Assembly: GCA_964247055.1 (NCBI GenBank)
Contig: OZ176054.1
Span: 8,618,001-8,682,000, forward strand
DNA: 64,000 nt
DNA from: Paragordius varius
Taxonomy: Eukaryota; Animalia; Nematomorpha
Reading direction: 5' to 3'
Part shown: in pieces, positions 3,001 through 63,812 of the stretch
Layout: each line of letters begins with the position of its first letter
How positions within the stretch are numbered: position 1 is the first letter of the stretch
Position numbers and translations under genes: made by a program
Notes under the pieces: model-generated
What the model was told of the DNA's origin: nothing
Seen by the model: only the letters and a program-made list of their open reading frames with translations
The model's database searches: none

Positions 3001-5441
3001 TGACTGAAGATATGTATCAAGGCTTGTCATTAGTGTATGAACTTTTAAAAAAATATGTCGAAAACTTGGTTACAATTGATTCCGAATATGATATGGCAGC
3101 TAGCTTAATAATCTATCCTTATTATCGATACCCGTTTATTATGGACTCGGATGAATTTGATACTAAAAGTAAATTGATACCTTATTATATAATTTTTGCT
3201 TTTGAAAGATCCTAAATGCAAATATATATATCTTTTATTCTTTTCCTGAAATCAAATGTAAATTACGCAACACAAGAAAAACTATAGAAAATACTGAAAA
3301 AATACTAACCGGTCTGACAACTCATAGATGTAGTCACCCGTGGTCATAAACGCAGTCATTATTATAAAAAATGTAAAATATATTTTGTAATTACATATAA
3401 AATCAAGTTAACGTTTAAAATGGTTTAAATTTTAAAAAGAGTTGAAACTGATATTTGATATAATTTGAAATATCACAGTTTTGTTTGTATTAAATTTAAT
3501 TTTTAAACTGGTATTTTCTAAAATTCAATCGAAATGTTTAGCTAGTTATTTTTCTAAGGCGTCACGCCATTAAATACTTTCATGACCGGTTAGTCCTAAC
3601 CAACCCACACTCTTCTACTCTAAAATTATTTAACAAGTTATCTACTTAGTCATATCTTGTGTTTTATAAAGCTGTAAATTAAAATAAGTGATTTTGTCTG
3701 TAGGTAAATTTTAGACAAAAAGTTTGAAAAAATGCCGAGATTGAGAAAAATCTTGATTTAAAATAAAAAAAATTATAAGTTTTGGTCAAAAAGTGTTGAG
3801 TTTGAAAAAATATATATAATAATTAAACTTATTCAGACCTTCCCATATTAACACCAAATTATGAAATGAAGATTAGAGACACTTTAATTGATTTGTGGAT
3901 TTGCGTTATACAATTATACGATCAATCAAAAAAATTGCTTAGTCTTGTATCAATAAACGATAATGGACAAAATCATACAGATACAAGCTCTAACATTTTA
4001 AACATTCCACCAATCAATGCTAATAAAAATGTAAATTAATATTTTATATAAACTATTAATCTATATATTTCATGCTTTAATAGCTAGAGAAGAACCATTA
4101 AATTTAGATCCCTTTTATGTTAAATAAGCGCAATTACCCTCATTTTCCATAATAAAAGTACGATTTAACCCAAAGAGTACATTTTTCAGCCATATTTGCC
4201 TTCATAAAAAGGCTTGAATTAATATTTTGTTTTTGTTTTGTGAAAATTGCTTAAAGTCAACATATAAGATTTTTTGTGCATTTTCAATATCAAATGTTTT
4301 AGACAAAACTGTATATTACGATTGAACTCGATGCAAAATGGTATCATTGTATAATTAAACATTGTATAACTCAAAGTCACCAATCGCAATCAATCAAAGC
4401 GACCAAGGTTTACCTTATCATATTTTGAAATGTTGATATTTATTAAATTTCCTTTTATTAATTATCATTTATACATAATTTAGAATTGTATTAAATCAAA
4501 TTTGAATTTGTTTTAATAATATTAACACTTTTTTACCATATTAACAAAAATACAAATTCATAATATTTCCCTTAAAATATTGCACCAAATTGGTGCAATT
4601 AATGTAATTTTTTTTGAATTAAATATATTTTGCCCCTTTTCTAAAATTATTGAAAATATACATATAATCTTACTTACTTACTTGATACTTGATGGCTTTT
4701 TGACTTCATGTTTGAAAGTTTTCATTTGCGGTCTTATTCCAAAGGTCCTTATCTAGACATTTGGTAATGTCGAGGTTTAGTATTTTTATGTCATTTTTAA
4801 TGTTGTCGCTCCAGGAATGTGTTGGGCGCCCTTTGCTGTTGTTTCCAAAGGGTTGTATGTGCTAAATGGTTTGGAGAGGGTGGTCGGTTTTTCTTCTTTC
4901 AATGTGACACAAGTATTTAAACCTGCTTCTTTGTATAAACTTTTCTATTGTGTCATTTTTGTGTTTAAGATGAATATTGTAGTCAGAACAGCAAGCTTTA
5001 ATTATTTTGTTTTCCGTATTTATCATTTTGTCAAGATTTGTTTTATTTAGGGGCCATGTTTCGGTGGCGTAAGTAAGAGCTGGCCTGTCACCTGCTTTGT
5101 ATATTAGCCATCTATAATTTATTTGCTTTTATTAGATGACCATTAATATTATATTATATCTTTTATCACTTAGGTTTTGAAAGATATTATAACAAAACTA
5201 CCAACCAATCTGTATGATACGGGTTACATTATAGAAACCTTGAAAGATACATTACATTCAAATTCCCAAAACTCTCCCGAACTCCTATTATGTTTGGCCC
5301 TATTGTAACTTTTTTTTGAAATTATTGAAAAACAATACATGTAATCGGAACCGGAATAATTTCTTTTCAGGCCGTTTATAAACCGAAACCAGGGTTCTAA
5401 AAATATTTTTATTAGTATTAATACCATGTTAACAATATTAT

Positions 5442-5482
<41 letters not shown>

Positions 5483-8400
5483 TATTTTTAAAAATTCTTT
5501 AAAAAGGTAGCGCACAATAAAATTTTGTTGTGTTAATATCATTTATATTGAATGTATGCTCATTTAGCTACATCGGTATTCAAAATTCAGTAATATTATG
5601 ATTAAACCCTCCCTATCTGCCAAAAACATTTTATCACTTAAATTTTTTGGACTATAATCTTGTTTTATAAGTCTCAAATCGGATTCACAAACAAAAAATT
5701 TTGGATAGCCGGTAGCAGTTCCGGTTTTAATCCCAGAATAATTTGACTTATATCATATGAATTAGATACATTAACAACAAAGATTATATGGACGCTTTGA
5801 AAATATATGTGGAATGTAATTGTAAGCTTGAAACATTTGGAATTTTAGAGCATGATGCTAAAAACCAAATCTTTTTACTTCAAAAATTGGTGAAAGCTGT
5901 CGAGATAGGAGAACAGTGCTCAATTTATTCGCTGTTTGCCATAGACCCTGAGAGAACTATCGGATTGTTAATCAAAAACAGATTTGATGTAAATGAATAT
6001 TTATACCATTATATATTCTTTAATATCATTTATCTTAAACGCCGTATTATTTGATTTTCGATTTATTATAAATTATTTAATCTAATTTTATTGTAAAATT
6101 AGATTAATATACCTAATTATGTGTTAAGTTGAACGATCGATTTAAATCAGTTAAAGTTTTAGTTGAAATACTGTTTCCAAGTTATTTTAAAGATAAAAAA
6201 ATATTTTAACACAAAGTTAATCAATTGGGATCCATGTTAATTTCTATAAAGCAGCATGATTATTAAGTTTTGTCTCAACTTAAGCTTGCTTTTATTTTTT
6301 ATGTTCTCAATATAGTTTTAAATACTTATCTCAATTATTTTATTTTCTTATTATACGTTAATGTTTTGCTGAAATTATATTAATTTAGTTAAACCTAGAT
6401 GATATCCTTCAATTGCTAGCAAAATATGATATCAAATTGGAGCTACAATATTTACATGCCTTGTTTGAAACAGATAATACATTTGGTAAAAGATATCACG
6501 ATTTGCAAGTAATGTTACCTTTGTATAATACAGATTGAGCTTTACATCAAATATGATACATGGAAATTATTAAGTTTCCTAAAACGCAGTCAACATTATG
6601 ATTTACAAAAGGCTTTGGATTTATGCCTCAAACACAAATTGTACCGTGAATCTATTTATATTTATGGTAATTTCTCAATCGGAAATATTTTAATGTTAAA
6701 ATTTTGGTATTGTTAACACGCCGTAAATGTTTAGCAAATTTATAGAAAAAATATACTATATGTTTTATCCTATAAGTTTTTTGGTTTGATTAGGACATTT
6801 TAAGAAAATATTATAATTTTTATCTATAGTAAAAACTGGTAATACAAAGAAAGCTTTGTATCTCCTGGTTAAAAGTCTTAAAGATGTAAACGGTGCTATA
6901 ACATTTTGTAAAGAACATGATGAAATCGAACTTTGGCAGGAACTGATTCAACTTTCAATCGATAACCCTGGTATATTTTAAGTGATTTTTTTAGTAATAA
7001 GCTTAAACTTAAAGTTTTTTTATTGCAATAAGGTAAATAAATGGTAGATTACATGATCAAATTGTAAATATTTGCTATTAAAGGAATTTTTAAAATGCGT
7101 CAGCTAATGGTATATTCAATTATACATTGCTTTTACAGTAAAATATGTAATTATCTGGACGAATTTTTTAACTAACGGACATAATTTTTTTATAAGAGAC
7201 AGAGTGTTAAAATCAAAAGATTAAAATTTTTAATTGGCGGACAAATTTTTTATTATACGGACAAATTTTTTTTTAACGGACAAATTTTTTTTTATACGGA
7301 CAAATTTTCGATTATACGGACAAATTTTTTTTTATACGGACATAAATCCGAAATATAATAGGGTAAAAGGATCACTTATCTATAACACTGGACAACATTT
7401 CTGCCACTCGAGTTTTTTGCATTTTTTGATATTTAGTATCATTCTAACAGTAAGTCTAAAATAAAATTTATAACTCCTTCTAAGAATTTTGTATAATTTG
7501 ATAGTTTTGATTATGCGCCCTCTTTATCAATATTTTACTAAAAAATGTTTTTATTTGAAAATATACAAGTAATGCCCATTTGTAATATAAAAAAGTAATA
7601 AAAACATTATAAAATATATACTAATAGGTATTACATCGACACTTATTATTGGACACAGATAGCTACAAACGCGCGAAGCGAGAACATTTTTTTAAATATT
7701 ATAATTTTAAAACTGGATGAAAATAGCTCAAACTTTGTTTAGTTGGTGATGAATGTCCAAAAAAGATAACACAAGAAAGTTTTTTTGTGTGAAATATTTT
7801 TTTATTGCTTTTATGTCACTCAAAACAGCCATTTTTCGGTTTTTTGTTTTTTAAAAATTACCATCTCATCAATAATAATTTATTTTCTTTACGAGGCTGA
7901 TTATTTCGAAATTTTAAAGATAAAAACAAAGTTTAAGGTATTTTTGATCTTTTATAGCCATTTACAGTTATAATTATGCATTTTAGTATCCACTAGGTAA
8001 AATATTTATGATAATAATAATAATTTTAAAAAGACAAACCAAAAGCTGTTTCAAACATTTTTTTTAATTTAAATTCTTATATAACGCTATTAATTATATT
8101 AAAATAATTTATATGATTTTCAAAATAGTTTGTCTGCGAAAATTCTTGATTTATATAAGGATTGAAAATTTCGACCTTAAATCCAAATAACTTTTATATC
8201 CGATGATATAAATGACTTTCCACCATTAAGATGCAGTGTTTTGCGCACTTTCGAATGATATAAAATTCATGGCTTCATATCTAAAACTTTTAATTTAAAA
8301 ATTCGAGTTTAATGTTAAATCGGGGCTAAAAATTATCGATAAACTCTAATATTAAAAAAATCTTTAATGCTAGACCAATTCTCTTTTAAGATATACTAAT

Positions 8401-11400
8401 TATGTACTTTAATGAAATAAATTTTAAATTTACAAGAATGGCAGTTAAATAAAGTTAAAATTGTTGTCTAGTGTAATATTGATAAATAATAACCCTATGA
8501 ATTCTAGTCGGTTAAATGTTTACTTTGTATTTTATAAGAAGCTTTAAAATTATAACATAGCATTTGATATTCACCGACTTAAGAATAAACCATTTTTGAT
8601 TTAATATTAACTAATATATTAAATGAATAGGATATAATAAATCTCGTATTTAACTAAGGCACAATATTATTTCATTTGCATTCTATTTGTAAAATTAAGA
8701 AAAACCGTATCATTACTATATTCATTTTAAAGAAACCTCTTTACTATTGAAAAATAATAATTCAATTTTTCATCTTATTTTTACAATGTTTCCATTCTTA
8801 TAATAAGGTTTAATCGAAAATATCAATAGTCTGGGCTTCTACACTGACTGTATTATGTAACATATCAACTCTCTTTATTATATTGTTAGGTGGGACAACT
8901 TTCAATTAACGACATGATGGGACTCTTCTTAATATTAAACATCTACCGTATAAGCTCAATAAGCAGACGAGTAAATACTAATCGTCTGCTTTTAACATCA
9001 ATTATAACTGCAATATAATGTAATAGAGACAATAATTTATTAATATAATATTTATATGAAAATAACATCAAAATAAATCGATGGTAAAAAATTCCATATT
9101 TAAATCTTTCTTATTTTGGGCTCGTAATTTGTGTTTAAATTCATGGAAAATACACTCAATAGGGTTTAATTGAGGTGAATATGGTGGCAAAAAAATTAAA
9201 TTTTCGAATTCTTTATTTCGAGAATAACGATGAATAGGGGCATTATCCAAAATTATATAGGATGTTGAAGGTATTATTCTAAAACATTCCTGTAAAAAAT
9301 GATATATATCATCCCCATTGTATGGGTCAGATTTATATTCATATTTTATCATTCTGTTTATTCCAATCATAGCCAAATAGTTTAATTCAGATGAAGATGG
9401 CGATGACGGTGAGAATGATGGTGAGCGTATAATTGAACGATTTTCTGTGCAATCATCATAAAATTCTAAAGGTGAAATAATATATTACCATAGGTGTGAT
9501 CCATTAATAATTACTATAGGCCGAATAAAGAGTATTAAATATAGATAATGTTAAAGTTTATTAAAATTGATTAAATTAAGATGAAAAGATTATGGATACA
9601 CGTAAAAAAATATTAATTAGTTAATAATTTATCATAAATTAAATTTGATTATATTTAAGATGAAAAGACTATGGGTACAAAAAGAACAAAATTATTAATT
9701 AATAAAATTAATAAATTTCGAAATTTGATATGTGTACTAGGTTTTTTGACAGGCGAGCAATAGATTTATACATATATTTAACGTATACATATTATTGGTA
9801 GTCTATTTACTTTATTTTTTGTTCCCGTTTGGCGATAGTTGCGTATTGATTAAAACATCGAATAGTTAAATTTACATTTTTTTTATCTTACAACCATAAC
9901 TAAATATTTAAATACGGCCAAATTTATTTTATGTTATAAACTACTGTATTATCATAAGACATAAGTCAAATATAAAAATGGAATTAGGTACCGAATATGA
10001 GTTCATTTTAATGAACGCCCCTGTCAAAAAACCTAGTACACATATCAAATTTCGAAATTTATTAATTTTATTAATTAATTATTTTGTTCTTTTTGTACCC
10101 ATAGTCTTTTCATCTTAAATATAATCAAATTTAATTTATGATAAATTATTAACTAATTAATATTTTTTTACGTGTATCCATAATCTTTTCATCTTAATTT
10201 AATCAATTTTAATAAACTTTAACATTATCTATATTTAATACTCTTTATTCGGCCTATAGTAATTATTAATGGATCACACCTATGGTAATATATTATTTCA
10301 CCTTTAGAATTTTATGATGATTGCACAGAAAATCGTTCAATTATACGCTCACCATCATTCTCACCGTCATCGCCATCTTCATCTGAATTAAACTATTTGG
10401 CTATGATTGGAATAAACAGAATGATAAAATATGAATATAAATCTGACCCATACAATGGGGATGATATATATCATTTTTTACAGGAATGTTTTAGAATAAT
10501 ACCTTCAACATCCTATATAATTTTGGATAATGCCCCTATTCATCGTTATTCTCGAAATAAAGAATTCGAAAATTTAATTTTTTTGCCACCATATTCACCT
10601 CAATTAAACCCTATTGAGTGTATTTTCCATGAATTTAAACACAAATTACGAGCCCAAAATAAGAAAGATTTAAATATGGAATTTTTTACCATCGATTTAT
10701 TTTGATGTTATTTTCATATAAATATTATATTAATAAATTATTGTCTCTATTACATTATATTGCAGTTATAATTGATGTTAAAAGCAGACGATTAGTATTT
10801 ACTCGTCTGCTTATTGAGCTTATACGGTAGATGTTTAATATTAAGAAGAGTCCCATCATGTCGTTAATTGAAAGTTGTCCCACCTAACAATATAATAAAG
10901 AGAGTTGATATGTTACATAATACAGTCAGTGTAGAAGCCCAGACTATTGATATTTTCGATTAAACCTTATTATAAGAATGGAAACATTGTAAAAATAAGA
11001 TGAAAAATTGAATTATTATTTTTCAATAGTAAAGAGGTTTCTTTAAAATGAATATAGTAATGATACGGTTTTTCTTAATTTTACAAATAGAATGCAAATG
11101 AAATAATATTGTGCCTTAGTTAAATACGAGATTTATTATATCCTATTCATTTAATATATTAGTTAATATTAAATCAAAAATGGTTTATTCTTAAGTCGGT
11201 GAATATCAAATGCTATGTTATAATTTTAAAGCTTCTTATAAAATACAAAGTAAACATTTAACCGACTAGAATTCATAGGGTTATTATTTATCAATATTAC
11301 ACTAGACAACAATTTTAACTTTATTTAACTGCCATTCTTGTAAATTTAAAATTTATTTCATTAAAGTACATAATTAGTATATCTTAAAAGAGAATTGGTC

Positions 11401-14400
11401 TAGCATTAAAGATTTTTTTAATATTAGAGTTTATCGATAATTTTTAGCCCCGATTTAACATTAAACTCGAATTTTTAAATTAAAAGTTTTAGATATGAAG
11501 CCATGTATTTTATATCATTCGAAAGAGCGCAAAACACTGCATCTTAATGGTGGTAAGTCATTTATATCAATCGGATATAAAAGTTATTTGGATTTAAATG
11601 GTCGAAATATTCAATCCTTAAAGAAGTCAAGAATTTTCACAGACAAACTATTTTGAAAATCATATAAATTATTTTAATATAATTATTAGGGTTATATTAG
11701 TATTTAATTTAAAAAAATGTTTGGAAAAGCTTTTGGTTTGCTTTTTTAATAAAAATTATTATTATCATAAATATTTTACCTAGTGGATCCTAAAATGCAT
11801 AGTTATAACTGTAAATGGCTATAAAAGATCAATAATACCTTAAACGTTGGTTTAATCTTTAAAATCTCGAAATAATCAGCCTAAATTATTATTGATGATA
11901 TGGTAATTTTTAAAAAACAAAAAACCGAAAAATGGCTGTTTTGAGTGACATAAAAGAATAAAAAAATTATTTCACAAACAAAAACTTTCTTGGGTTATCT
12001 TTTTGGACATTCATCACCATCTAAACAAAGTTTGAGCTATTTTCATCCATTAGTTTTAAAGATATATTAATTAAAAAAAATGCTCTCGCTTCGCGCGTTT
12101 GTAGCTATCTGTGTCCAATAATAAGTGTCGATGTAATACATTTTAGTATACATTTTAAGTTTTTATTACTTTTTTATATTACAATAGGGCATTACTTGTA
12201 TATTTTCAAATAAAAACATTTTCTAGTAAAATTCTGATAAAGAGGGCGCATAATCAAAACTATCAAATTATACAAAATTCTTAGAAGGAGTATAATTTTT
12301 ATTTTAGACTTACTGTTAAAATGATACTAAATATCAAAAAATGCAAAAAACTCGAGTGGCAGAAATGTTGTCCAGGGTTATAGATAAGTGCTCCTCTTAC
12401 CCTATTATATTTCGGATTTATGTCCGTATAAAAAAAATTTGTCCGTATAATCGAAAATTTGTCCGTATAAAAAAATATTTGTCCGTTGAAAAAAAATTTG
12501 TCCGTATAAAAAAAAATTTGTCCGCCAATTAAAAATTATAATCTTTTGATTTTAACACTCTGTCTCTTATAAAAAAATTATGTCCGTTAGTTAAAAAATT
12601 CGTACGGATAATTACATATTTTACTGTAAATTATAAAATGCGCCCAAAATTGTTGATAATATTGATGGCCTATATTTTGATAGAGTGGAGAGCTATTAAT
12701 TGGGTAAAATTATTTTTAAATCATTTTGATGCAAATATTTTTTTTGTATATAATTTTATTTATAAGCTAAAACAAAAAACTATTTTATTTGTAAGATTTT
12801 GTGACCTTACTTTTACAAAACATTGGATCATACATTGATCCTATACTATTGGTACAACAGATTCCAGATGGTTTGAAAATTAATGGATTACGTAATTCAT
12901 TGATAAAGATAATCAAAGATTATCATTTGCAGGTATGAAATTATTAATATTTTTGAGTTACCATAGGCAGTGTCGCAATTTTTTTAAAAAATATTATGTA
13001 AAACATATGCGGTTAAACTTTGGACCGACATAAAGAGAATATTTGGTTTAATTTTATTATACAATTACAATTAGCGACATCATAAAAAAAGATTAGCAAT
13101 ATTTCGAATACTTTTAATTTGGTTTAACAGCTCGATTAATAAAATATGCTAAAATAAAGTAAAAATAACTTGGTATATGGATTTTATCATATTTTTATTT
13201 ATCCTAATACTATTTTTATTTATTTAAGATGGAATTAAATGAATGTGCAAAAATGATTGTACAAACTGATAGCGACCATTTAGGAAAAAATTGGTACAAA
13301 GCCTTAAAGCAGCCATATAAAATTACCAATTACCCATTTATAGAAGATAACATGATGAATGATCAAAAAAATCGGTTCGACTTTATAATTTTTTACATAA
13401 TGTTCATAGCAATTATATATATTATTTATATATAAAACAATTAGTTCTGTTCAAAATCTCATTTGTGGACTTTGCAATGGAAGCATACACAAACTGCCAA
13501 AGATTTCAATATCAACGGATTTTGTCATAAATCCAAACACGATTAACCCATTTGAGGATAGTCGTGAGGAGATGAACGAAAATAAAAAAAATTTGATCTA
13601 TAAATGTCGCCATATGTATCATTCCGTTTGCTTGAATATGCATAAAGATTCGCTTTTGCAGTCTGAAATAATCAAATCAAAATTGGCAATGAAGGAAAAT
13701 TTAGGACCTAGATCACATAATAAAACTGTTATGGTAAATTTTAGTATTAACTTTAACTAATATATACTTATATTGAATCGCATAAGAGAATCTCAACCGC
13801 TTATCATAAAGAAAATGATTTTTTTTGTTTGTGCATAATATATTTAAATTTTTCCAAATATTTGAAATCATAAATATTTAACCTATAATTATGTAAAAAT
13901 GATGTTTTTATCAAATATACAAAAGTTGTAAGTGTATCCTTCCGGTATAATACAAAGTAACATAAAACACGCTGAAAAATTTAATAATCGATAAAAATGC
14001 ACTTTTTATACTTAATTCAAATAAGGTATCGCCAAGCGTGATCTTTTTGATGTTTATATAAAATCAAATGCATTAATATGCATCCGATGTTTTAGTAGTG
14101 AGATTTATGTTATTTACGATTTGATTTATATTGCTATTATGCATTTTTTTGATTTTTAATATTTTTTCTCACCAGGTTGGGATAATTACAATTTTTATCG
14201 AATAACAGATCACAAACAAAATTTTATATATTCTAGTAGAATGAGGTGCATTTGGTTTATGCACCTAAGAAAGATATTTTCACTTTTATGAAGTAATTGA
14301 TCCATATTAAAATTAGCGCATCCTATCAGAATTTTTTGGTAAAAACTAAAGCTTCACAAAATATTTTATTAATAGAAAACAGTTTTTAATTGGACATAGT

Positions 14401-17400
14401 CTCCAAATGTCTCCTCGGTTGTTGTTAAAATAAACGCAAAAATGCCACAGACCTGGTGTGCATTCGAGAAATATATTGGGCATTTGTGAAAATTTTGGAT
14501 TTTAAACCTAAGTGTATATGATCACAATAAAGGTACTTCTTATTTTACCAATTTTTGCCAGTTTGTTGCCAAACAATCGTATTTAAATAACTAGTTTGAG
14601 AAATACCAATTTTATTAAGTGTCAATAGCATATTTTTGGTAATTATAAAATTCCATATTTATTTGGAATTTCGAATCCGTGGTTATCATAAAATATTTGA
14701 GAGGATCGCATTTCGGACACCTTTGTTCTAGACTATGACATCAAAAAAACTTATTAAGAAATGCATAGTTTGTGAAATTTAAAATTTACTTAAATTTTTT
14801 GTTTTAAAACATGGTGGAAACGGTATAAAAATACTTTTTCTCTATAATAATATAATGCTTCCAAAGATCTATATTAGATGAAAGGGTTCATTAGCTATCA
14901 CCTATAATTAAATTTTTTGAAAAAGCAATATATAATAAATTAAATAAGACGCACAGTTTTTCAATAAAAATTCTGAGGTGTCAGAATCTTCATTAGCATC
15001 GATTTATATAGAAAAGGCGTTTGCTTTCATAATATCATAAAGGGATGTGCCGTTTTTACCATACTTTAATATATCATATACGCTTCAACAAACATTTATC
15101 CAAAATATTTAAGCAACGTATGCATTTTCAGCCATAGATATTTTTGATGTCATTATATAGCATAAATAAAAATTGCTATCTCACATTTTTGCATTTTTAA
15201 GAGCACTAGCCCATTTTTAGGGATCCGAAAACTGGAGATTTAGCTCACGTTTATATTTAATCTATATATTTATAAAAATGGAAAATGCTGGCTTTGTGAT
15301 CTGGTACAGGAAAACCGGTAGACCCATTCAAATCCAAACTTCGAAAAAATATAATCATTAATAAATGCTCCGACAATAGCTTCGCCCTTTTTTTGAAATA
15401 GGCCCCCAGTTTGGGCCAACCCTGTGTGAAAAACAGGTTTTTTTGAAACAGAAGTCCACAAAAATCGTGTCTTTGAGACAATTTTCTGGAGAACGTTTTG
15501 GACCATTCAATTTCAAATATGATTTTTGTTTACTTATTTTCGATTGCGCCGAACATAGTCGAGTCACTTTTTTGATTTAGGCCCTCTTTTTACCCGCTCC
15601 CCCCCCCCCCAAAAAAAATGCCATTTTTTTCAAAAAACAAAGTCCACAAAAATAATTTTTAAATCGATTTTTCGCTCTAGGCATGAGACCGTAAAAATTC
15701 TATATGGATTCCACGTATTTCCTGTTGAAAGGCAAAAATTTTAGTCAGGCGTTTCTTTGATGATAGCTGCTGGGTAAGGAGCTACCCGCTAACTGATTCC
15801 TCATGTAACTTTGTGATCTGTTTCCGGAAAACCGGTGGACCCAATCAAATCCAAACATCAAAAAAATTTAATCATTAATGAATGCCCCGACAATAGCTTC
15901 ACCCTTTTTTGGAATTAGGTCCCCAGTTCGGGCCTACCCCGTGTGAAAAATGGGTTAAGTCAATTTTTTGGAGAACGTGTTGGACCATTCAATTTCAAAT
16001 ATGATTTTTGTTTACTTATTTTCGATTGCGCCGAACATAGTCGAGTCACATTTTTATTTAAACCCTCTTTTTACCCGCTCCCCCCGTAAAATGGCATTTT
16101 TTTCAAAGAACAAAGTCCACAAAAATAATTTTTAAATCGATTTTTCGCCCTAGGTATGAGACCGTAAAAATTCTATATGGATTCCACGTATTCCCTGTTG
16201 AAAGGCAAAAAATTTAGTCAGGCGTTTCTTTGATGATAGCTGCTGGGTAAGGAACTACCCGCTAAAAACTGATTCCTCATGTAACTTTGTGATCTGTTTC
16301 CGAAAAACCGGTAGACCCATTCAAATCCAAACTTCGAAAAAAATAATCATTAATAAATGCCCCGACAATAGCTTCGCCCTTTTTTTGAAATAGGCCCCCA
16401 GTTCGGGCCAACCCCGTGTGAAAAACAGGTTTTTTTTGAAACAGAACTCCACAAAAATCGTGTTTGAGACAATTTTCCGGAGAACGTGTTGGACCATTCA
16501 ATTTCAAATATGATTTTTGTTTACTTATTTTCGATTGCGCCGAACATAGTCCGTCACTTTTTTGATTTAGGCGCTCTTTTTACCCGCTCCCCCCGTAAAA
16601 TGCCATTTTTTTCAAAAAACAAAGTCCACAAAAATAATTTTTAAATCGATTTTTCGCCCTAGGTATGAAACCGTAAAAATTCAATATGGATTCCACGTAT
16701 TTCCTGTTAAAGGGCAAAAATTTTAGTCAGGCGTTTCTTTGATGATAGCTGCTGGGTAAGGAGCTACCCGCTAAAAACTGATTTCTCATGTAACTTTGTG
16801 ATCTGCTACCGGAAAACCGGTAGACCCATTCAAATCCAAACTTCGAACCCCCCCCCCCCCCCCCCAGAAGTCCGAAGGACTTCCTCGGGCTGCTTAGCAG
16901 CACGAGATTTACGCTAGTTTAATATAAATATTGTTTGCTTTTTTTAATATGATACATTTAATATTATATTTTGGATTCAAGAATCAGGTTGTAAAGCATA
17001 AAATTTGCCAAATTTTGATATGGAGCAATAATCTCAAAAGTCTAAATAGTTGTCCAAGATGACTTGAAGCCACGAGTTCTTAAGAGGATCCTGACACAAT
17101 AGTATCTCAGAATATTTTTATTTCATAATATTATTTATTTACCCACCCATTTTGTCCACCTTATAGGAATAGTGTTTTGTCTAAGGGCTTCGAAATACTA
17201 TACCCGCTAAATTTTTTTTCTGATATAAATTTAATGATATCTTAATCCCCTAAATAAAATATTCTTCCCTCGCTTCATTGCATTCCTTATAAACAAACTC
17301 CCTTATCAATCGGTTTTGAAAGCGAGTTAACATACAAATTATGAATATTATTTGATTTTTCAAATATATTTTTGATATATTATATAAAATATTTTGGATT

Positions 17401-19014: not shown

Positions 19015-19445
19015 ATGTTTGGGTCTTTTTATTTTCCTATTACATTAAACTATGCAACATGCTCACAAATAATTTTACACCCTGATAACAAAGTCAATGC
19101 AAATATCTCTACAAATGGAATTATACATAAACCTAAATATAGGGCTAAACAATGCAAATACAAAAAATCATCTTTACACGAAATTATTGATTTAATTAAT
19201 AAACAACCTAAAGAAGCGCCCCCTTATACAGCTTCTATTAAATATGAATGGAAGCGTTTGAAAAGCAAGTCTGGGAAAATTTTTTACAAGAAGTAAATTA
19301 TAAATTATGTTTTAGTCATTTGGGTAAAAGGTTTTTTTCGATGGAAGAAATTGAAACATATATAACTAGTCCTAACACCTGTAAATGTGGTCTTCCCAGT
19401 CCTTTAATAATAGAAAAATATTTTGATTTTAAACCCGGTTTTTAA
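19015..19445 (+). CDS. Compact MBD5/MBD6 (sba)-like methyl-CpG-binding-domain protein, ~135 aa from ATG 19015
   Basis: Exons 19015-19292 and 19316-19445 joined by a 23-nt GT-AG intron give EWKRLKSKSGKIFYKNHLGKRFFSMEEIETYITSPNTCKCGLPSPLIIEKYFDFKP. This matches the MBD5/6 pattern W.R....G..Y....G......E....Y......CKCGL..PL......F.F.P. True start is uncertain. Confidence 0.8.
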
Positions 19446-34300: not shown

Positions 34301-37300
34301 TTAAATCAACAGGGGCCAAAACCAAAAGCTTTATGATAATCCTGATACTATTTATACCAGAATATATATAAAATATCATCAGGATATATTAATACCCCGG
34401 AATTTCGGGCGCAGTGAAGAGCCATTGCGTGAAATTTAGCTTAATTATTGAATGTGACTTAATTATATTAAAAGTACCATGAATGACAGATATTTTAAGG
34501 GAATCAAATTTTTTGAAAACGATAATTATAAATATGATGATGGGGTGAAATGCCAAAAATTACAATGCGAAACGATCATTAATTTGAACCACGATTTACC
34601 TTATTTCCATAAACTAAATAGGCCGAGAGATTTTTTACTTTAGAATCACACTCGAATTTTTCTTTGTAAAAAACACATAGTAAATATATATTCTTAATAC
34701 AAGTTCCGTTTCGTAAATATAAATCTAAATTTTATAAAATTTACAACTTATAAAAAGCTCTTAAAATTTGATTATCCTACATTTAATTTCCGTTTTCTAT
34801 ATTACTACATTCAATCGTTTACATAAGCTTTAACTGCTAAAGGTAAAAATTTGCAAAATTTCTACTTTTCTTCATACAGATTTCGTAAATTAAAATCTTT
34901 CGATTAGGAAATGGGCATCTGGAGCAAGGATTACATTCCAAAAGGCACTCGGTTTGGACCTTTGGAAGGCAAAATCTTTGAAATTCGAGACGTTCCAAGA
35001 AATGTTACTAGAAAATATTTTTGGAGGGTATTTTTTTAGATTTTGAAGGCATTAATATGAAATCGATCACACATATTTTCAATATATTATCTTATCATTA
35101 GATATATGAGGAAATGGGCTTCATAAAATCCAACATATTGAAACATTACATTGATGCATGTGATGAGGGAAATAGTAATTGGATGCGTTATGTCAATCCC
35201 GCTCGTAATATCAAGGATCAAAATCTAGTGGCCTGTCAATTAAATTACAAGATATTTTTCTATACAATAAAACCCATATATCCCGGAACCGAATTATTGG
35301 TTTGGTATTGTCGGGATTTTGAAAAGCGATTAAATGCATCCATGTTTCTCTATCTTCCAAACACAGATCTTATAGGTCTTCATGGCATAAATGCCGTTTA
35401 TACTTGCAGTCAAAACAGTGGGAACAATGCTCATTCAACCATTCACACATTTTTGTGTGATGACAATACCAGTTTGGTTCCAGCCACGACAAGATCAATC
35501 TTTTTTGAGCGGTTACACAAAATGGATGCAAATTTACTTTCTGGCAATGCTAGTAGTAATTATATATACCCTATCCCGCCAACAACTAATACCGAACTTT
35601 GTCTAAATAGAAGAAGAGATGGCACAAGCCATTTGAGATCACCTAAAGTACATAATTTTTCGGACACTATACCAATTTTGAGCTTGGGTCTGACAACAGC
35701 TCAACATGCTTGGGATTCTATCTACCAAAATCAATATCAAAGATTGATGAAGTTGACAACCCTTACCACACTCACTATGCCAGATCAAACAAAGAAACTT
35801 TTTTCCTCCCCATTGTTTCATTCTCAATTAAATGGATTGATTATTACGCAAGGTTATACAAATACCACATCCACAAACAATTTATATAGCAGTGAATATG
35901 CTGGGCTATATGTAACTACTCTCTTTAATGCTATGCAAAGTAAATTTTACTTGTTATTATCGAATCCGAATATTTTAATATTATAGATATTGTAAAAACA
36001 TAAAGGGAGACTTTTAAGGTTGCCAATACATCAAGTGTATAAAATACATTTAAAATAGTCAATGCACAAATTGTGATATAGATAAGAAGCAAATATTATT
36101 GACAATCATTAATTTTAACATAAAATTCATAATTTTTGTTGCTAGTATACATCAATGATATTGAAAATTTTATATAAAACTACTCAAGGCAGGATATTAT
36201 TGTTAAATTTATGAACCTACGGTATAATGCCCTAAAAAATATTTTTTACATTTACGGAATATTAACTAAATCAAAAAATCGCATTTTTTCGCATATTACG
36301 TCAGAAATAAAACTTTTGGGAAAAGCAATAAAGATTACAATTTATTTACCTTTAAAGATATAATTAAATAACTTATTCTCCAATGTATAAAACTATCAAC
36401 TCAATTTTTTGAGGTTAAGATAAGCGAAAATTTAAGACTAAATATTTTTTGGCGGTATTGATTTGGATGTACTAACTAAAAACTATATTTTGTTATTCTG
36501 ATCAAATCGTGCAGCACAAGGCACAAAATAAGGTTAATAAAATTATTCTGTTAAAATTTATACATTTCGTAGAAAAATTTATCGGAATGATGCTTTTGGT
36601 TAAACCCTTACGAGTTATACTTTTTGCCAATTGTTCCATATCGTAATTCGTATATTCGCGCACACATGTTTTTTTCGGTGAAAGCTAAATTATTTTATCA
36701 AAAAATTTATAAAAATATATGACAACCTATATTTAATCGCACAATATCTAAATTAAATTTGGATTTTATATACCAGGCAAAATTTAATCATTAAGGCATA
36801 TTATACCATTAAAATACAGTTTATTTTATTATCAAAATCCAGAAAGTATTAAATATTATTGCAAAATTAGATTTGATGGGACTTTCTAGATCTTATATAA
36901 AAATTAAAATTTAATATAAATCCTGTTTTGCCTATATATATATTATATTATTTCAATAAATTTATGCAATTAGCTTCCATTAAAATAAATATTTCATAAT
37001 ATGCGCTAATTTTGCTATTTTCGATACTTATTTATTATCATGAAATTAATAACTTGACCTGTAAGGTTAAAACCAAAAGCAACGCAAGCCTCTATCTATC
37101 AAAATATTTTTACGTGCACTTTTATGCAGTGTCTATATAAAATACACTGATGAAATAAATATATTCTGATAGAAAATTGTATCAGGATTAACATGGTGCT
37201 TTTGGCTTTGTGGCGAGTGATTTAAGAAATTACACTTTTTGATAACTGTTCCATATCAGAAAAATGATTTGCGCAGATTTTTTTAAAATTTTTAGTGAAA

Positions 37301-40300
37301 TCCAGCTAATTCCCTCGAATATCACTAAAATTGACCATACACTACATGTAAAAATCTAAACATTATTTTAAAATTTTTACTTTTAGATGTGGGCTCCGAA
37401 AGTGTCAAATTTTTGGACCCATCCAAAATGAGCAAGTTCTTTTAATATAAAGGCGGGGCCGAGATTGTGCATTAAAAAATAAAAAAAATATACCGAATTT
37501 TTAAATACAGCAAAATTTTGGTAAAGCGAGTTTTATGGTATTATGAAGCAGGGGAATGAAAACACTTTAAGATTATATATGAACACTTTTTCTATATAAT
37601 CGATGATGCTGAACAATTTTATCACCTCGGAATTCAATAAAGTTCGTATGCTTTTGAATTTGGGTTAATTTTAATAAAAAAATAATATGTGCATAAATTT
37701 GGAGATCAACGATTTGATTCTAACTTCTGAAGTCATAGATGTGTTCAGCATCATCAAATTATATAGAAAAATGTTTATAATAGCGTTTTTATACTGTTTC
37801 TGTCATGCAAAATAATACGGAGTACAATAAAATTTCGCTAAAAATAATTTTGAACAAAGTGTGTATTTTTTCGAAAATATGTTTTTTATTCCAAAATTCA
37901 GCATATTAATTTTTATCGCAACTCGGATTTGCGTATATTACAAGAGCTAAAAAGGCATCACTATAATCCTGATATTTTTCTCTCAGAATTTATATATTTC
38001 ATTGGGATATTATTTTATGCACCCCGATATGACACAATGTAACTATATAACACTTTATATTCACTTCCCTTAGAAATATTAAAAATGTTCTTAATATGAG
38101 GCATATCAAAAACTAAATATTCTTTTTAATGTATTATAATTTTAACAAAAATTAACATTTGACTGCATAGTTTCATATGTATTTCGACTCGTCCTAATGT
38201 GTAAAATTTGGCTAATGCTTTATAGTTACTAATTTAATCTTTACTAAACTAAAGCTTTTAGCTATTAAATGATATACCTTAATTATAGTGTAAATATTAA
38301 TTAATGATAAAATATGGGTTGTTGTAGACACTTAATTAAGTTTTGTAATCAAATCACCATACATTATGATTTTTGACCTTGCGCGGTACCATGTTCAAAT
38401 AAAATTAATATTTGTTTTAGATAATGCACACAAAACATCATGTGTTAATCACTTAATTGAGCCATTGATGCCAAAATCGGCGATAGCTAAAAACTGTCAA
38501 GACAATGATACACACCTTGCCCCATCAGAAGAAGGTAAAGACACCTGTAAAAGTTTTAAACAATCCGATTATGGAGTGGTGACAACTATAAAACAAAAAA
38601 TTTTATCCATCATAACAACTTTATCTCACCCTACTACCGTTTTTACAAACTTGTTAACTAACAATTATAATAATAATAATAGTAATGAGAATAAAACTAA
38701 GCATACTAGAGTATTAAGCGATTCAGATGATAGTGTTGTCGATTCTAAAAGTACAGTAAATCATGATGTAGAAGAAGGAGTAATTGATTACAGCCTGAAG
38801 GGTAATAAGAAAAGATTGATTACAACAAAAACGAATTCACATGCAGCAAAACCACAAGAGGATCCAAAGTTAGATGGTTTACTCTCCCTTTCGACACTAA
38901 ACTCCAACTATAGAAGTGTGGGTGATATACCGATGCAATTCAAAATATCAGAAATAAATGCTATATCTTTTCCAATCATAAATCCGGTTTTAGGTTCTTC
39001 TCCCCATTATATATTCATGAACAATTTATGGCAATACACAAGGCATTCACCATTATATAATTTAAACTTTCTTAAAACTGCCACTAAAACTTCCAATGTC
39101 CATAGACAAATATCTTTTTTAAATAACACAATCACAACAGAAAGTTTATTAATAAAAAACGAAACTGTCACAAGTGAATCACCTGACGGAAGTTTCAAAA
39201 ACGCAATTAACCCTCAAACCAATTTTCATGAAAGCGATTTTATCAATCATAAAAGCTTTGAATCCAAATTTAATCCCTTGTTGGGGAGAGATCAACTTTT
39301 TTATATTAATAACAATAAGCAAAACTATGGAAGCGAAATTTCACCACTATCTGATTTTACTCATCAATCCAACGACGGCTCATTTGGTGAGAATAGTCCT
39401 AATCGCAATGAATTAATTATAAAAGAGGGTATAAATTTTCTAAAACAATTTTCTAACTCTGATCATTCAACTCCTGACAAATTTGAAAATTCTAAAGAAA
39501 TGCAATTGCCTTTAAAAGACACCATTCAAATAAATAAATTAAAAAATGGTTACAATGATAAAACTCAATTCAATCCTCCATCAACATTATCCGCTTTACA
39601 TAGAGCTAAATATGGGGAGTTATATTCTGAAAAAGACCAAAGCTCTTCCGCAAACAATTCAACCCAATTGATTCCAAAAAAACGCGCCTCAATTAATGAA
39701 CCCAAAAAAACAATTTACAATTGCCATATATGCTCCAAAACATTTGGACAATTATCCAACCTAAAGGTACATTTGCGTACACATTCTGGTGAACGTCCCT
39801 TTAAATGTGATCAATGTGGTAAAGGATTCACTCAATTGGCCCATTTGCAAAAACATAACCTTGTACATACCGGTGAAAGGCCTCATGAATGTTCTTTATG
39901 TCAAAAGCGGTTTTCTAGCACGAGTAATCTTAAAACACACCTACGATTACATAGTGGTCAAAAGCCGTTTCAATGCACTGACTGTCCAGCTAAATTTACG
40001 CAATTCGTTCATTTAAAATTGCACAGAAGGTTGCACACAAATGAACAAGGGGATGATTTGTCAACCTATAACGAGACTAAAAATTTTGGTAAAAGCTTTC
40101 ATTATCAGCATTCTCGATCAAACTCAATGAGTTCGAATTCACCCAATAAATCAGATGAAGGATTAGGAACTACAGACACCGAGAAAACATTATCGCCACA
40201 AAATGGGATGTTCTTAAAAAATCCAGTAACAAGGTAATTTAAGAGTTTTATTCACACTTTTGTAAATATAGAGAAATAATACAGAAAATTTTTATTATTT

Positions 40301-50200: not shown

Positions 50201-52244
50201 GAGGGCGAAAGTGTGTTCACACAACCAAACTCTCCCAGTGCTGTGACAAAGGAGGAATTTAAAGAAGATGCTTGGGATGAAAAAAAGGATGAAAGCAACT
50301 ATATTAAAGCTATCGATACAATAATCCCCACAAATAACAATAATATAAATGAAAATAATGAAAAAAATGATAGCGAAGAATTGAATCGCAACGTTTCACC
50401 AATTAGCCGTGAATCGCTGAAAAATGAAAGTAATGCGAACGATACTAACATAGAAAAAGCAACCACGCCTCAACTATTAAGTCCTTCAAAAATGACAAAT
50501 GAAATTGAAGGTTCTCAACAAGCAACTAATCAGTAAGCATTTTAATATTATATAACATTCTTATACTTGGATTACATCACTAAATTTTTTTATTATTCAA
50601 CGCTACATAAATAATAAATGTAAATAATCTTTTTTTGTTTTATTAAAAACATAAAATATTTATTGTGATATAATTTAAATTTTATTTGATATATAAAATT
50701 TTACATTCGTAATGGCATAGGAGTTAACAGCAATTTACGGAACTATAACAGTTTTTTAACATAATTAATAAATTGATTTCTTTTTAATTATTTTAAGTAA
50801 AAATTATTTTATTTGAATAAAAAGGGTATTTGTTTGGATTTTTATAAACTTGTACCTTCTATTAATGTTAAATTATATCACAATGGTTTCTTGAACTATG
50901 CGGGGCTAAAGTACATAACTAATATATGACTAAAAACAATATATACGTGTTTTAAGATATAATTTCAAATTTAACCCAGTAAACGGAGATAAATAATTAT
51001 ATAATAAATGTTACATTTATTATAAACTTTCAATAAATATACAGCGAAGATGAATGCACGCTTAACGACAATGCTGACACTTTTCCTTTGCCACACGATA
51101 CGCGTAATTTGATTGGAAAAATCTTAACACCAAACCTTTATAGTCAATATAATAATATCATTTCCAAGAATGGAATTTCATTGGATAAATGTATTAGACC
51201 TGGAGTTGATAACACTCAATTAGTTGATCCGTTTTCACCAGGTTATAATTATTTTGTTTTTAAAAATTGAAATTGTACACGTAAAACGAAAAAAAATAAT
51301 ATATTTTTATTACTTATAATTTAGGTTTAAATGTTAAATCGGTTCGGAAATGTTTAATAATGAAATTTTTAAAACAATATTAAGTTCATACAAATACAGT
51401 TTAGAGTCTCTTTTTTGCTTTTTATTATAAGGACTTAAATTGTATCCGGACTTGTGAAGGCTTTAACACTTGCCTTCCCAGGGCTGACAGTGATGATGGA
51501 AAAATTGCGTAATTTCGGGATTCGAATGCCTACCCTATTATACCATCACGCCTTCAGAAATTTCTTTAATATCAATTATTAGATATTCAAAACGTGTATA
51601 TTTGAGATATTTATAAAGGCAATTATATAGTCCAATTTTCTTGGCTAGTGTTTTCCTCGCCTCTTCTTATATTGATTATTAATACAACTTTTATACTCAC
51701 TTTTAATATTTTAAAGTTGGTTATGTACATATTCATATCATAATATTATTTTTTATTTTTTGATTATCGTTAGACTTAATAGCACTTGAAGCGGATTGTT
51801 ATTATACGTTCAAATCAGTTTTTGATGAATACATCAGAGCCCAACAACCTAAATTTCAACAAAATCTTGACCAGCGTCCTAACCTAAACCATGTACCTTT
51901 ATTGGCTTTGGACACTCTCCCGCCCATCAGATCTGCCAAAAGGATTTCCATATCATTTTCAAGAAATATTGCTGGTTTTGCATTTCCAGCGGGCACAAGC
52001 CGAATCGAAAGGAGACAAGTTGAAAATATTATTTGTTACGCGGTCAATAGCATTGGACAAACAAAAGGTATTTTGTTTTTTTCATTATGAAGTGGCAACC
52101 AATACAATAAGAAAAATTTTAATTTTTGCCGCAATCTTTTTTATTTAGCAATATCTGAAAAAAACTTTAAAATATAAATTATTTTTTAAAAATACACTTC
52201 TTACATGGATTATTATATGTTTTTTTTCACTTACCATAAAATTT

Positions 52245-52280
<36 letters not shown>

Positions 52281-62244: not shown

Positions 62245-63812
62245 GTGTGCGTTATTCCTTTTAATAAGGTAAAAATTGTTAACCAGAGATTTATTTCATT
62301 ATTGTATTTTGGACCATATTATTACTTTAACATGTTTGCCGAAACTTTGGTATACAGATTCAAATCCAGAAAAAATGCTGAAATTAATAAAAGTTTAATT
62401 ACTGATGTATATGGTCAATCTGTCATTATTTTGTAAATTATTTTTAATTTTAGATGTACAAACGATATTTTGTTTATATATTTCAATAATAACATTTACA
62501 CTTGCTCAATCAATTGTAAAAATCAGTCAACATATGTGAATAAAGAATGTACACTTTACCGTTTTACGGTAAATGGTAATTCTTTATCATTGGAAAACGT
62601 TGGAAAATTTGAAAACAATAAAGTTAATAATTTTTTATTTTAGTTTTATTTTGAATATTTTATCATTACAAAACATGAATTTGGGTCTAATATAATTCAA
62701 TTGTCGTCGGTTAACAATCCTGATAAACTTGGTTGTTTTGCTTGTAATACGGACAATAATATATTTTTGATTGATTGGGATGGTAATAATTTAACTCAAA
62801 ATAATTTTTCTGTTGTTTCACTGAAACCTTCTACGACTTTTATGCAAAATATTTTCAAAAGGTAAAATATTATTTAAATTTTTTAGTTTAAATTATTGGC
62901 CCATTTTTGATAAACATTGTATTGTTACAACTTGTGTGTCTCCCTGTACCACCCTAATTGGACTTATTACAATGACAGTTGCTGATCTATCCTTAAATAT
63001 CACCACAATAATTGGTAAAAAATCCGAACAAAAGGGGACCCTATGTCAAATAAAATGCATATCCAACCCCAATAATTCCATTTCGGCATCAATTAAATTA
63101 TCCGAATTTATACCTGAACTATTTTCGGATCAAACTGTGGCCGATACCAAATCCATGTTATCAGATTTGAGCGAAAACATTATACTTAAATGTGAACAGT
63201 TGCATAATATGTTAATCATTGTTTTACCATTGTTTGTACAAAAACAAAATTTGTTGAATGATATTGATGTGGATAATAACGATACACTGTCAAACATCAT
63301 ACTGCTTTTTAAAATAAGGAGGGTATCCCTTACAACTACTGTTTCCGAAGATAATTTTATGCCGTACACTTTGGAACATTATCAAACGCTAGAATACCCA
63401 AATGATGTAAAAAGATTTTTTTAGTTTAGTTTAACTATTGATTCTTTTTCGAAACAGTTTGCTTCGGCAAAATTATTATATGATATAATATTTTTATTGG
63501 GGTGTGACAGACATATTTTAGTGTATTTGTAGATTTTTTAAAAAAGTTAAAGTGTATATTGTATCGCCTTTGAAGTATACAAAGAATATGAAAAAATTAT
63601 ATGGCATGGCTTTAAACACTTTTAATCCGTACTTTTATTTGATTTCTCTCATTTTCGCACAAAATATTTTTAAAATCATATATTTCCTATAAATTATTTT
63701 TTTAGATTGATTGCATAGACGTATCGTTAATAGATGACAAATCTGAGCTCAAATTATGTATACTAGCCTTAGCTTCCAATGGAAGGAATATTACATTAAC
63801 TATACCGATTAG
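62245..63812 (+). CDS. Beta-strand-rich (propeller-like) protein, possibly divergent Nup155/Nup170; both ends uncertain
   Basis: Stop-free exons 62245(or 62332)-62432, 62454-62622, 62644-62861, 62887-63406, 63425-63520 and 63706-63812 join in phase. GCFACNTDNNIFLIDWD and IDCIDVSLIDDKSELKLCILALASNGRNITL loosely resemble Nup155 propeller segments. The coding status is strong; the family call is weak. Confidence 0.6.

What the first reader, a model, noticed from the sequence alone, without database searches (positions are those of the whole stretch)
6509..6533. 25-nt GT-AG intron inside the conserved VPS41 clathrin repeat
Seen: gtaatgttacctttgtataatacag separates RYHDLQ from IELYIKYD; unspliced it frameshifts to a stop. 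Known: Vps41 has RYH..Q-I.LY..YD as one contiguous motif, and introns this short are reported for Paramecium, nucleomorphs and dicyemids but fall below the usual animal minimum. Inference: this animal splices 21-25 nt introns while the same gene also has 5-6 kb introns. The class recurs at 19293, 62433, 62623, 62862 and probably 10285.
Basis: partly seen in the sequence, partly recalled or inferred. Interest (0 to 1): 0.85.

Follow-up and report, generated by a model that had tools for sequence, protein, structure and literature searches.

The report
25-base intron in hairworm VPS41
An ordinary housekeeping gene (VPS41) of a horsehair-worm-like animal is interrupted by a 25-base intron at the codon boundary where a related hairworm has a 589-base intron. 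That is strong indirect evidence that a third animal group has introns under 30 bases, but I could not get RNA reads showing the cut.

Summary
Window 6509-6533 is a 25-nt GT..AG segment between two VPS41 exons, and reading through it hits a stop after 9 codons.

Evidence that it is an intron:
- The upstream exon ends at position 221 of Pfam's TPR_Vps41 profile and the downstream exon starts at 222.
- The exon ends align to residues 856 and 857 of the annotated VPS41 of Gordionus sp. m RMFG-2023, a horsehair worm.
- In the Gordionus genome, a 589-nt phase-0 GT..AG intron sits at that same codon boundary. The three neighbouring intron positions also match.
- Short-read DNA contigs from three runs (two samples) contain the 25 nt, so it is not an assembly error.

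Limits:
- No RNA run holding this gene was available, so excision is inferred, not shown.
- The sites at 19293, 62433, 62623 and 62862 are plausible on reading-frame logic only.
- The site at 10285 is weak.
- The 5.8-kb intron is mostly a 5.5-kb palindromic transposon.

I found no paper reporting introns under 30 nt in Nematomorpha. A 2026 survey lists only myxobolid myxozoans and Dicyema. The scan has already noted the same class on other pieces of this genome and just upstream in this gene.

The parts
5766..5988 (+). VPS41 exon (aligns to Gordionus P0031 residues ~756-820)
   Evidence: tblastn and boundary inspection
5989..6388 (+). ordinary GT..AG intron, 400 nt
   Evidence: gtaaatga...aatttag; Gordionus has an intron of about 1.5 kb at the same position
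6389..6508 (+). VPS41 exon, 40 codons, ends ...GKRYHDLQ
   Evidence: Pfam TPR_Vps41 profile positions 195-221; last Q aligns to P0031 residue 856
6509..6533 (+). the 25-nt micro-intron, phase 0: gtaatgttacctttgtataatacag
6534..6666 (+). VPS41 exon, starts IELYIKYD, 44 codons plus 1 base (phase 1 at its end)
   Evidence: Pfam profile positions 222-265; first I aligns to P0031 residue 857; PDB 7zu0_F Vps41 residues 805-850
6667..6829 (+). ordinary GT..AG intron, 163 nt
   Evidence: same phase-1 boundary (tat g|gtaatttc) in Gordionus L006
6830..6970 (+). VPS41 exon (VKTGNTKKAL...SIDNP)
   Evidence: Pfam profile positions 266-314; 57-60% identical to P0031 residues 901-947
6971..12795 (+). 5825-nt intron; 7132-12630 is a palindromic Tc1/mariner-type element
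   Evidence: inverted repeats, inner arms 100% complementary; DDE_3 ORF; read depth 15-40 times the background at 7000-7399
12796..12932 (+). VPS41 exon (FVTLLLQNIG...DYHLQ)
   Evidence: 67-69% identical to P0031 residues 949-993
19293..19315 (+). candidate 23-nt micro-intron gtaaattataaattatgttttag joining a 99-codon and a 42-codon ORF in different frames
   Evidence: no family match for the gene; other GT..AG pairs of 35-38 nt also fit
62433..62453 (+). candidate 21-nt micro-intron (length a multiple of 3) that holds the only in-frame stop (TAA)
62623..62643 (+). candidate 21-nt micro-intron (length a multiple of 3); its acceptor TAG is the only in-frame stop
62862..62886 (+). candidate 25-nt micro-intron; the only GT..AG of 18-40 nt that joins the 73-codon and 199-codon ORFs, which lie in different frames
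10285..10307 (+). 23-nt GT..AG in the transposase remnant of the palindromic element; weak candidate
   Evidence: the ORF 10289-10702 is open through it and the upstream piece is only 5 codons from an ATG

Best explanation
Window 6509-6533 is a genuine U2-type (GT-AG) spliceosomal intron of 25 nt in the VPS41 gene of a nematomorph-like animal. It is the shrunken counterpart of an ordinary intron that the common ancestor with Gordionus already had at this codon boundary. Removing it joins ...RYHDLQ to IELYIKYD... in frame and restores the conserved helical repeat of VPS41. Shown here: the sequence, the frame logic, exact contiguity with the family profile and with the ortholog, the orthologous intron in Gordionus, and presence of the 25 nt in genomic DNA of two samples. 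Inferred: that the spliceosome excises it. U1 would pair with GUAAUG. U2 would pair at an adenosine either at intron position 9 (gUuAc, followed by CCUUUGU) or at positions 17-20 (uAuAAu). The acceptor is ACAG. With only about 16 nt between the two splice-site motifs, both ends must be recognised across the intron as one unit (intron definition).
For: GT..AG ends, and frame restored only by removing the 25 nt. Pfam TPR_Vps41 positions 221|222 fall on the two exon ends. The exon ends align to residues 856|857 of Gordionus VPS41 P0031 and to 535|536 of P0042, without a gap. Gordionus locus L006 has a 589-nt GT..AG phase-0 intron at FHGLQ|VKLYAKYE, and the three neighbouring intron positions are shared too. 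An unrelated eukaryote contig, L001, has a 134-nt intron at YHGLQ|VELYADYE. DNA contigs of X1, X2 and X4 carry the 25 nt and none shows the joined form. GT..AG-bounded 25-mers occur at only 0.15% of positions. Four further 21-25-nt GTAA/GTTA...TTTAG segments in two other genes of the window are each needed to join long ORFs. The positional-conservation criterion is the one used to validate myxozoan micro-introns (PMC13644364).
Against: There is no RNA evidence. All four runs laid on the window were DNA contigs, and the runs guessed to be RNA under the same species label hold none of the sampled words. The species' own spliced VPS41 protein is in neither protein collection. The polypyrimidine tract is poor next to the acceptor (ATACAG), and no branch point can be assigned. 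A 31-nt alternative (6509-6539) also keeps the frame, but it deletes two conserved residues.
Confidence: 0.88

Rival explanations
1. The intron is real but is spliced inefficiently or in a regulated way. Many transcripts would keep the 25 nt, meet the stop after 9 codons and be degraded, so the micro-intron would act as a dosage valve.
For: Weak pyrimidine tract next to the acceptor and very small size. The length is not a multiple of 3, so retention is immediately nonsense. All three multiple-of-3 candidates in the window carry an in-frame stop. That pattern is known from Paramecium, where it is taken as a sign of selection against translated retained introns (my own knowledge).
Against: No expression data of any kind. 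VPS41 is a single conserved housekeeping gene with intact exons.
Confidence: 0.05
2. The 25 nt is a frameshifting insertion in a decaying or allelic copy of VPS41 (a pseudogene) and is not removed.
For: Without RNA, a broken gene cannot be formally excluded. The region is transposon-rich.
Against: The insertion would have to be bounded by GT..AG (0.15% of positions) and land on the exact codon boundary where Gordionus has an intron. All other exons are open and conserved at 45-69% identity to Gordionus. The segment is present in contigs from two samples.
Confidence: 0.04
3. The 25 nt is removed by a route other than the spliceosome: IRE1/tRNA-ligase-type cleavage as in the 23-26-nt XBP1 intron, or excision from somatic DNA as with ciliate IES.
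For: The size matches XBP1-type introns and the shortest Paramecium IES (my own knowledge).
Against: There are no twin hairpins: the fold of 6484-6558 is no better than shuffles (z = -1.3). The ends are GT..AG, not TA..TA. The site is a spliceosomal intron position in Gordionus. None of four DNA runs holds an excised form.
Confidence: 0.02
4. The 25 nt is an assembly or sequencing artefact.
For: AT-rich long-read assemblies can carry indels. The window differs from the read contigs at other places in intronic sequence, for example 5701-5754.
Against: The X1 contig covers 6422-6690 with no gaps. The gap totals of the X2 and X4 contigs are too small to hide a 25-nt deletion. X4 is a second sample.
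Confidence: 0.01

Closest known systems
Ultra-short introns of myxobolid myxozoans (Henneguya, Thelohanellus, Myxobolus; median 22-27 bp) - PMC13644364
   Same: Animal spliceosomal GT-AG introns under 30 nt that sit at conserved intron positions between conserved exons, in a parasite with an AT-rich genome.
   Different: In myxobolids nearly all introns are short, the genomes are compact (about 75 Mb) and the motifs are reduced to GTa / AG. Here the micro-intron lies between introns of 400, 163 and 5825 nt in a transposon-rich gene, and the candidates keep GTAA and mostly TTTAG. The lineage is also different (Ecdysozoa).
Dicyema japonicum short introns (about 26 bp) - PMC13644364, PMC6736024
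   Same: A bilaterian parasite with introns under 30 nt.
   Different: A genome-wide, single-peak short-intron regime in a reduced genome, not a discrete class beside long introns.
Ciliate and nucleomorph micro-introns (Paramecium about 25 nt, Stentor 15-16 nt, Bigelowiella nucleomorph 18-21 nt) - PMC5014332 and my own knowledge
   Same: The same size range. The pattern of in-frame stops in introns whose length is a multiple of 3 is seen in the three such candidates here.
   Different: These are not animals, and all their introns are short.
Orthologous VPS41 intron of Gordionus sp. m RMFG-2023 (GCA_954871325.2, L006 10726-11314)
   Same: Same gene, same codon boundary (after ...HxLQ), same phase 0, GT..AG.
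   Different: 589 nt against 25 nt. The shortest Gordionus VPS41 introns seen are 44-51 nt.
Flatworm micro-introns (Schistosoma, Opisthorchis; about 30-40 nt in a two-peak length distribution) - my own knowledge; PMC6530080 was listed in a search but not read
   Same: A discrete short class beside long introns in parasite genomes.
   Different: As far as I know, that class does not drop to 21-25 nt.

Membership tests
U2-type (major) spliceosomal intron | GT at the 5' end and AG at the 3' end | tested here: met
   gtaatg...acag
U2-type (major) spliceosomal intron | Removal restores the reading frame and gap-free contiguity with homologues | tested here: met
U2-type (major) spliceosomal intron | Position and phase shared with an accepted intron in a related species | tested here: met
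   Gordionus L006 10726-11314, 589 nt, phase 0; also L001 633-766
U2-type (major) spliceosomal intron | Absent from mature mRNA | not testable with these tools
   No RNA run holds the stretch, and the single read-laying run returned DNA contigs only
U2-type (major) spliceosomal intron | Branch-point adenosine and pyrimidine tract upstream of the AG | tested here: inconclusive
   Candidates are A9 (gttAc followed by cctttgt) or A17-A20 (tataat). No consensus can be drawn from 5-7 examples
U2-type (major) spliceosomal intron | Present in genomic DNA | tested here: met
   Contigs of X1, X2 and X4
Genome-wide ultra-short intron regime (Myxobolidae / Dicyema type) | Intron length under 30 nt | tested here: met
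   25 nt
Genome-wide ultra-short intron regime (Myxobolidae / Dicyema type) | Short introns are the norm and neighbouring introns are also short | tested here: not met
   Neighbouring introns are 400, 163 and 5825 nt
Genome-wide ultra-short intron regime (Myxobolidae / Dicyema type) | Splice motifs reduced to GTa and AG | tested here: inconclusive
   6 of 7 candidates start GTAA and 6 of 7 end TTTAG, but the sample is tiny and 5 of the 7 are unverified
IRE1-cleaved unconventional intron (XBP1/HAC1 type) | Twin stem-loops presenting the two cleavage sites | tested here: not met
   Fold of 6484-6558: -12.2 kcal/mol, z = -1.3, no twin hairpins
Ciliate-type internal eliminated sequence | TA-bounded and missing from part of the DNA reads | tested here: not met
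   The ends are GT..AG, and none of four DNA runs shows a 6508>6534 joint
U12-type (minor) intron | Conserved /RTATCCTT 5' motif | tested here: not met
   The 5' end is GTAATGTT
VPS41 (HOPS subunit) gene | Beta-propeller, TPR/clathrin-repeat and C-terminal RING regions in that order | tested here: met
   Pfam Beta-prop_Vps41 at 403-564, TPR_Vps41 at 6389-6978, RING hits at 13410-13757; collinear with P0031

The most novel reading that the evidence does not exclude
After splitting from the Gordionus lineage, this hairworm lineage collapsed many ordinary introns into a discrete class of 18-29 nt while keeping, and even inflating with transposons, kilobase introns in the same transcripts. Its spliceosome would therefore handle both extremes. 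Standard aligners and gene finders, which have minimum intron lengths of about 20-40 nt, break such genes. If so, part of the 'rampant loss of universal metazoan genes' reported for Nematomorpha would be an annotation artefact.
Probability: 0.3. Interest if true: 0.85.

Novelty: new member of a known kind. Interest (0 to 1): 0.7.

Why it matters
A 2026 survey of 51 animal genomes found introns under 30 nt only in myxobolid myxozoans and Dicyema, both with compact genomes (PMC13644364). A nematomorph-like lineage would be a third, independent origin.

It would also be the first case where such introns sit beside introns of 0.2-6 kb in the same pre-mRNA. That gives a natural system for asking what sets the lower size limit of animal splicing.

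There is a practical side too. Introns of 21-25 nt are read as deletions, or are forbidden, by common RNA aligners and gene predictors. Hairworm gene sets, BUSCO scores (71.6% for Gordionus) and claims of gene loss should therefore be re-examined with tools that allow micro-introns.

Tried and rejected
- RNA evidence: the look-up of sequencing runs gave five holders, and the four I laid were all DNA contigs. The five runs guessed to be RNA under the same species label hold none of the sampled words.
- Fragment search: the search for homologous proteins with the 67-aa ORF 6513-6713 found no candidate.
- Kinase-like ORF: the 932-aa ORF gave nothing at E <= 1e-10 among proteins of matching length.
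- Other hairworms: the Gordionus VPS41 region 780-1000 found no second nematomorph VPS41 and no protein from the window's own species.
- Synteny: 10-kb flanks of the Gordionus VPS41 locus hold no counterpart of the window's neighbouring genes, so the other candidates could not be compared.
- Gene families at 19.2 kb and 62 kb: Pfam, PDB and ESM Atlas gave nothing usable for either gene. The 'MBD-like' look of the 19.2-kb gene is my reading by eye only.
- Lingula and two arthropod-like contigs have no intron at the site, so the position is not universal in animals.
- Rfam and tRNA scans of the window found nothing, and no snRNA gene to inspect.
- Rejected explanations: U12-type intron, IRE1-type intron, IES-type excision and assembly error (see the membership table).
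- The 31-nt alternative 6509-6539 is rejected because it removes two residues that all relatives have.

Full report
**Observation.** Window 6509-6533 reads gtaatgttacctttgtataatacag, 25 nt bounded by GT and AG. Upstream, 6389-6508 is an open 40-codon stretch ending GKRYHDLQ. Downstream, 6534 onward reads IELYIKYDTWKLLSFLKRSQHYDLQKALDLCLKHKLYRESIYIY. Reading straight through gives HDLQVMLPLYNTD and then a stop. The window is 25-27% G+C, and only 0.15% of its 25-nt windows are bounded by GT..AG. Its last G joins TA at 6830-6831 to make a valine codon.

**The gene is VPS41 and the two exons abut exactly.**
- Pfam's TPR_Vps41 profile (PF23556) aligns the upstream exon up to profile position 221 and the downstream exon from position 222. 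The next exon (6830-6970) continues from 266.
- The downstream exon matches the solved Vps41 chain 7zu0_F at residues 805-850.
- A search of 1.84 billion representative proteins with the 45-residue exon returned only VPS41 fragments. In those that extend upstream of the match, YH-x5-LY is uninterrupted.
- BLASTP puts the last Q of the upstream exon on residue 856 and the first I of the downstream exon on residue 857 of P0031. On another animal VPS41, P0042, they fall on 535 and 536, with no gap.
- A 31-nt alternative (6509-6539) also keeps the frame, but it would delete two residues that all relatives have.

**Organism.** P0031 is the annotated VPS41 of 'Gordionus sp. m RMFG-2023'. It is encoded on OX940783.2 of GCA_954871325.2, and version 1 of that assembly is listed under the same name in 10.1101/2024.07.29.605683. 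By my reading this is the Montseny horsehair worm, whose genome paper reports 26.9% G+C and 64% repeats. Among 11 longer VPS41 proteins compared with the window (419-1282 aa), P0031 covers the most exons. It has the highest identity on most of them: 56-67% at 421-552, 57-60% at 6830-6970 and 67-69% at 12796-12932. The window therefore most likely comes from a nematomorph other than Gordionus. Earlier notes of this scan gave me that lead, and I checked it as just described.

**The decisive comparison.** In the Gordionus locus L006 the exon ending ...FHGLQ stops at 10725 and the exon starting VKLYAKYE begins at 11315. Between them lies a 589-nt intron, gttataatt...gtatattag, in phase 0. That is the codon boundary of the 25-nt segment. 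The three neighbouring intron positions are shared as well, with very different lengths:

| Position | Window | Gordionus |
|---|---|---|
| Intron before exon 6389-6508 | 400 nt | about 1.5 kb |
| The site in question | 25 nt | 589 nt |
| Intron after exon 6534-6666 | 163 nt | about 0.9 kb |
| Next intron (6971-12795) | 5825 nt | about 0.4 kb |

 An unrelated eukaryote contig from a JGI metagenome, L001, whose VPS41 looks plant- or alga-like to me, has a 134-nt intron at YHGLQ|VELYADYE. Lingula and two arthropod-like contigs have none there. Positional conservation between conserved exons is the same criterion used to validate myxozoan micro-introns (PMC13644364).

**DNA support.** Four public runs that hold the stretch all turned out to be DNA contigs.
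- The X1 contig covers 6422-6690 with no gaps.
- The X2 contig covers 6196-6690 with 14 gap letters in total.
- The X4 contig, from a second sample, covers 6360-6981 with 27 gap letters and a net gain of 19 letters.
- None of these can hide a 25-nt deletion, and no 6508>6534 joint was reported.

So the segment is in the genome and is not an assembly error, and no excised DNA form was seen.

**What is missing.** No RNA run held the stretch, and the runs guessed to be RNA under the same species label held none of the sampled words. The species' own spliced protein is in neither protein collection. Excision is therefore inferred, not shown.

**Mechanism (inferred).**
- The signals are those of the major spliceosome: GUAAUG at the 5' end and ACAG at the 3' end. 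Possible branch adenosines are at position 9 (gUuAc, followed by CCUUUGU) or at positions 17-20.
- The ordinary introns of the same gene use similar ends: gtaaat, gtaatt and gtatat at the 5' side, and ttag, atag and aag at the 3' side.
- The surrounding RNA has no significant structure (z = -1.3). That argues against an IRE1/XBP1-type intron.

**Recurrence in the window.**
- 62862-62886 (25 nt) is the only GT..AG of 18-40 nt that joins a 73-codon and a 199-codon ORF lying in different frames.
- 62433-62453 and 62623-62643 (21 nt each) lie in frame. Each holds the single stop that separates long ORFs.
- An 18-nt candidate at 63407-63424 behaves the same way. All three candidates whose length is a multiple of 3 carry an in-frame stop.
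- 19293-19315 (23 nt) joins ORFs of 99 and 42 codons, but GT..AG pairs of 35-38 nt also fit.
- These two genes matched nothing in Pfam, PDB or the ESM Atlas, so these cases are plausible but unverified.
- 10285-10307 lies in the transposase remnant of a palindromic element. The ORF is open through it and the upstream piece is five codons, so I do not count it.

**The long intron.** Intron 6971-12795 holds a palindrome spanning 7132-12630. Its inner arms of 1550 nt are 100% complementary. It carries DDE_3 ORFs, and read depth at 7000-7399 is 15-40 times the background, so it belongs to a high-copy family. The 5.8-kb length is thus largely one transposon insertion.

**Literature.** PMC13644364 (2026) states that introns under 30 bp occur, among 51 animal genomes, only in myxobolid myxozoans and Dicyema japonicum. 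Its main text does not mention nematomorphs. The Gordionus genome paper and a comparative hairworm preprint never use the word intron. Searches combining nematomorph or hairworm terms with intron terms found nothing relevant. The first hairworm genome paper (Cunha et al. 2023) is not in the library, so I could not check it.

**Verdict.** It is a new lineage for a known kind of feature, with the twist that micro-introns and kilobase introns share one transcript. The scan has flagged the same class on other pieces of this genome and just upstream in this gene.

Noticed in passing
window 7132-12630: A 5.5-kb palindrome inside the VPS41 intron. The inner arms (8204-9753 and 10020-11569) are 100% complementary, the outer arms 76-97%. 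Each arm carries a truncated DDE_3 transposase ORF. Read depth at 7000-7399 is 15-40 times the background, so it belongs to a high-copy family.
   Followed up: partly
window 4600-5199: A very high-copy repeat inside another VPS41 intron. Summed contig depth is about 41,000-69,000 in run X1, against about 700 for the flanks.
   Followed up: no
window 5701-5754: In all four DNA runs the contigs replace these 54 nt with another 19 nt (AGAATAATTTGATTTATAT). This is either an intronic allele or an assembly difference.
   Followed up: no
window 15290-16850: About 3.5 tandem copies of a 475-515-nt unit, 69-94% alike, richer in G+C (31-33%) than the surroundings and with open frames on both strands.
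   Followed up: no
window 51037-56222: A gene with several ATP:guanido phosphotransferase (creatine/arginine kinase-like) domains, including one 932-codon exon. No protein of comparable length scored E <= 1e-10.
   Followed up: no
window 35102-35983 and 38336-40234: By eye, a PR/SET-like domain ORF followed by a 633-codon ORF with C2H2 zinc-finger repeats. It is probably one PRDM-type gene, but I did not test this.
   Followed up: no
window 62433-62453, 62623-62643, 63407-63424: All three micro-intron candidates whose length is a multiple of 3 contain an in-frame stop. In two of them the stop is the acceptor TAG itself. This would be expected if retained introns are selected to be nonsense.
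   Followed up: partly
window 13375-13409: A 35-nt GT..AG segment could link the two frames of the VPS41 C-terminal part just before the RING motif (ICGLCNGS). Other acceptors are possible and this is unresolved.
   Followed up: no
L006 750-1392 (Gordionus VPS41): The 5' introns of the Gordionus ortholog are about 44-51 nt. That is short, but roughly twice the size of the window's micro-introns.
   Followed up: partly
L001 633-766: A eukaryotic VPS41 gene, plant- or alga-like by my reading, on a JGI metagenome contig has a 134-nt phase-0 intron at the same YHxLQ|VELY boundary. Several database 'proteins' start exactly at VELY/MELY. At least some of these are ORF calls that begin at an internal GTG rather than at an exon edge, as L004 and L005 showed.
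   Followed up: partly
window 6517-6533 and L006 11300-11314: The 3' ends of the 25-nt intron (tgtataatacag) and of the 589-nt Gordionus intron (tgtatattag) share tgtata. In DNA this AT-rich, that may well be chance.
   Followed up: no
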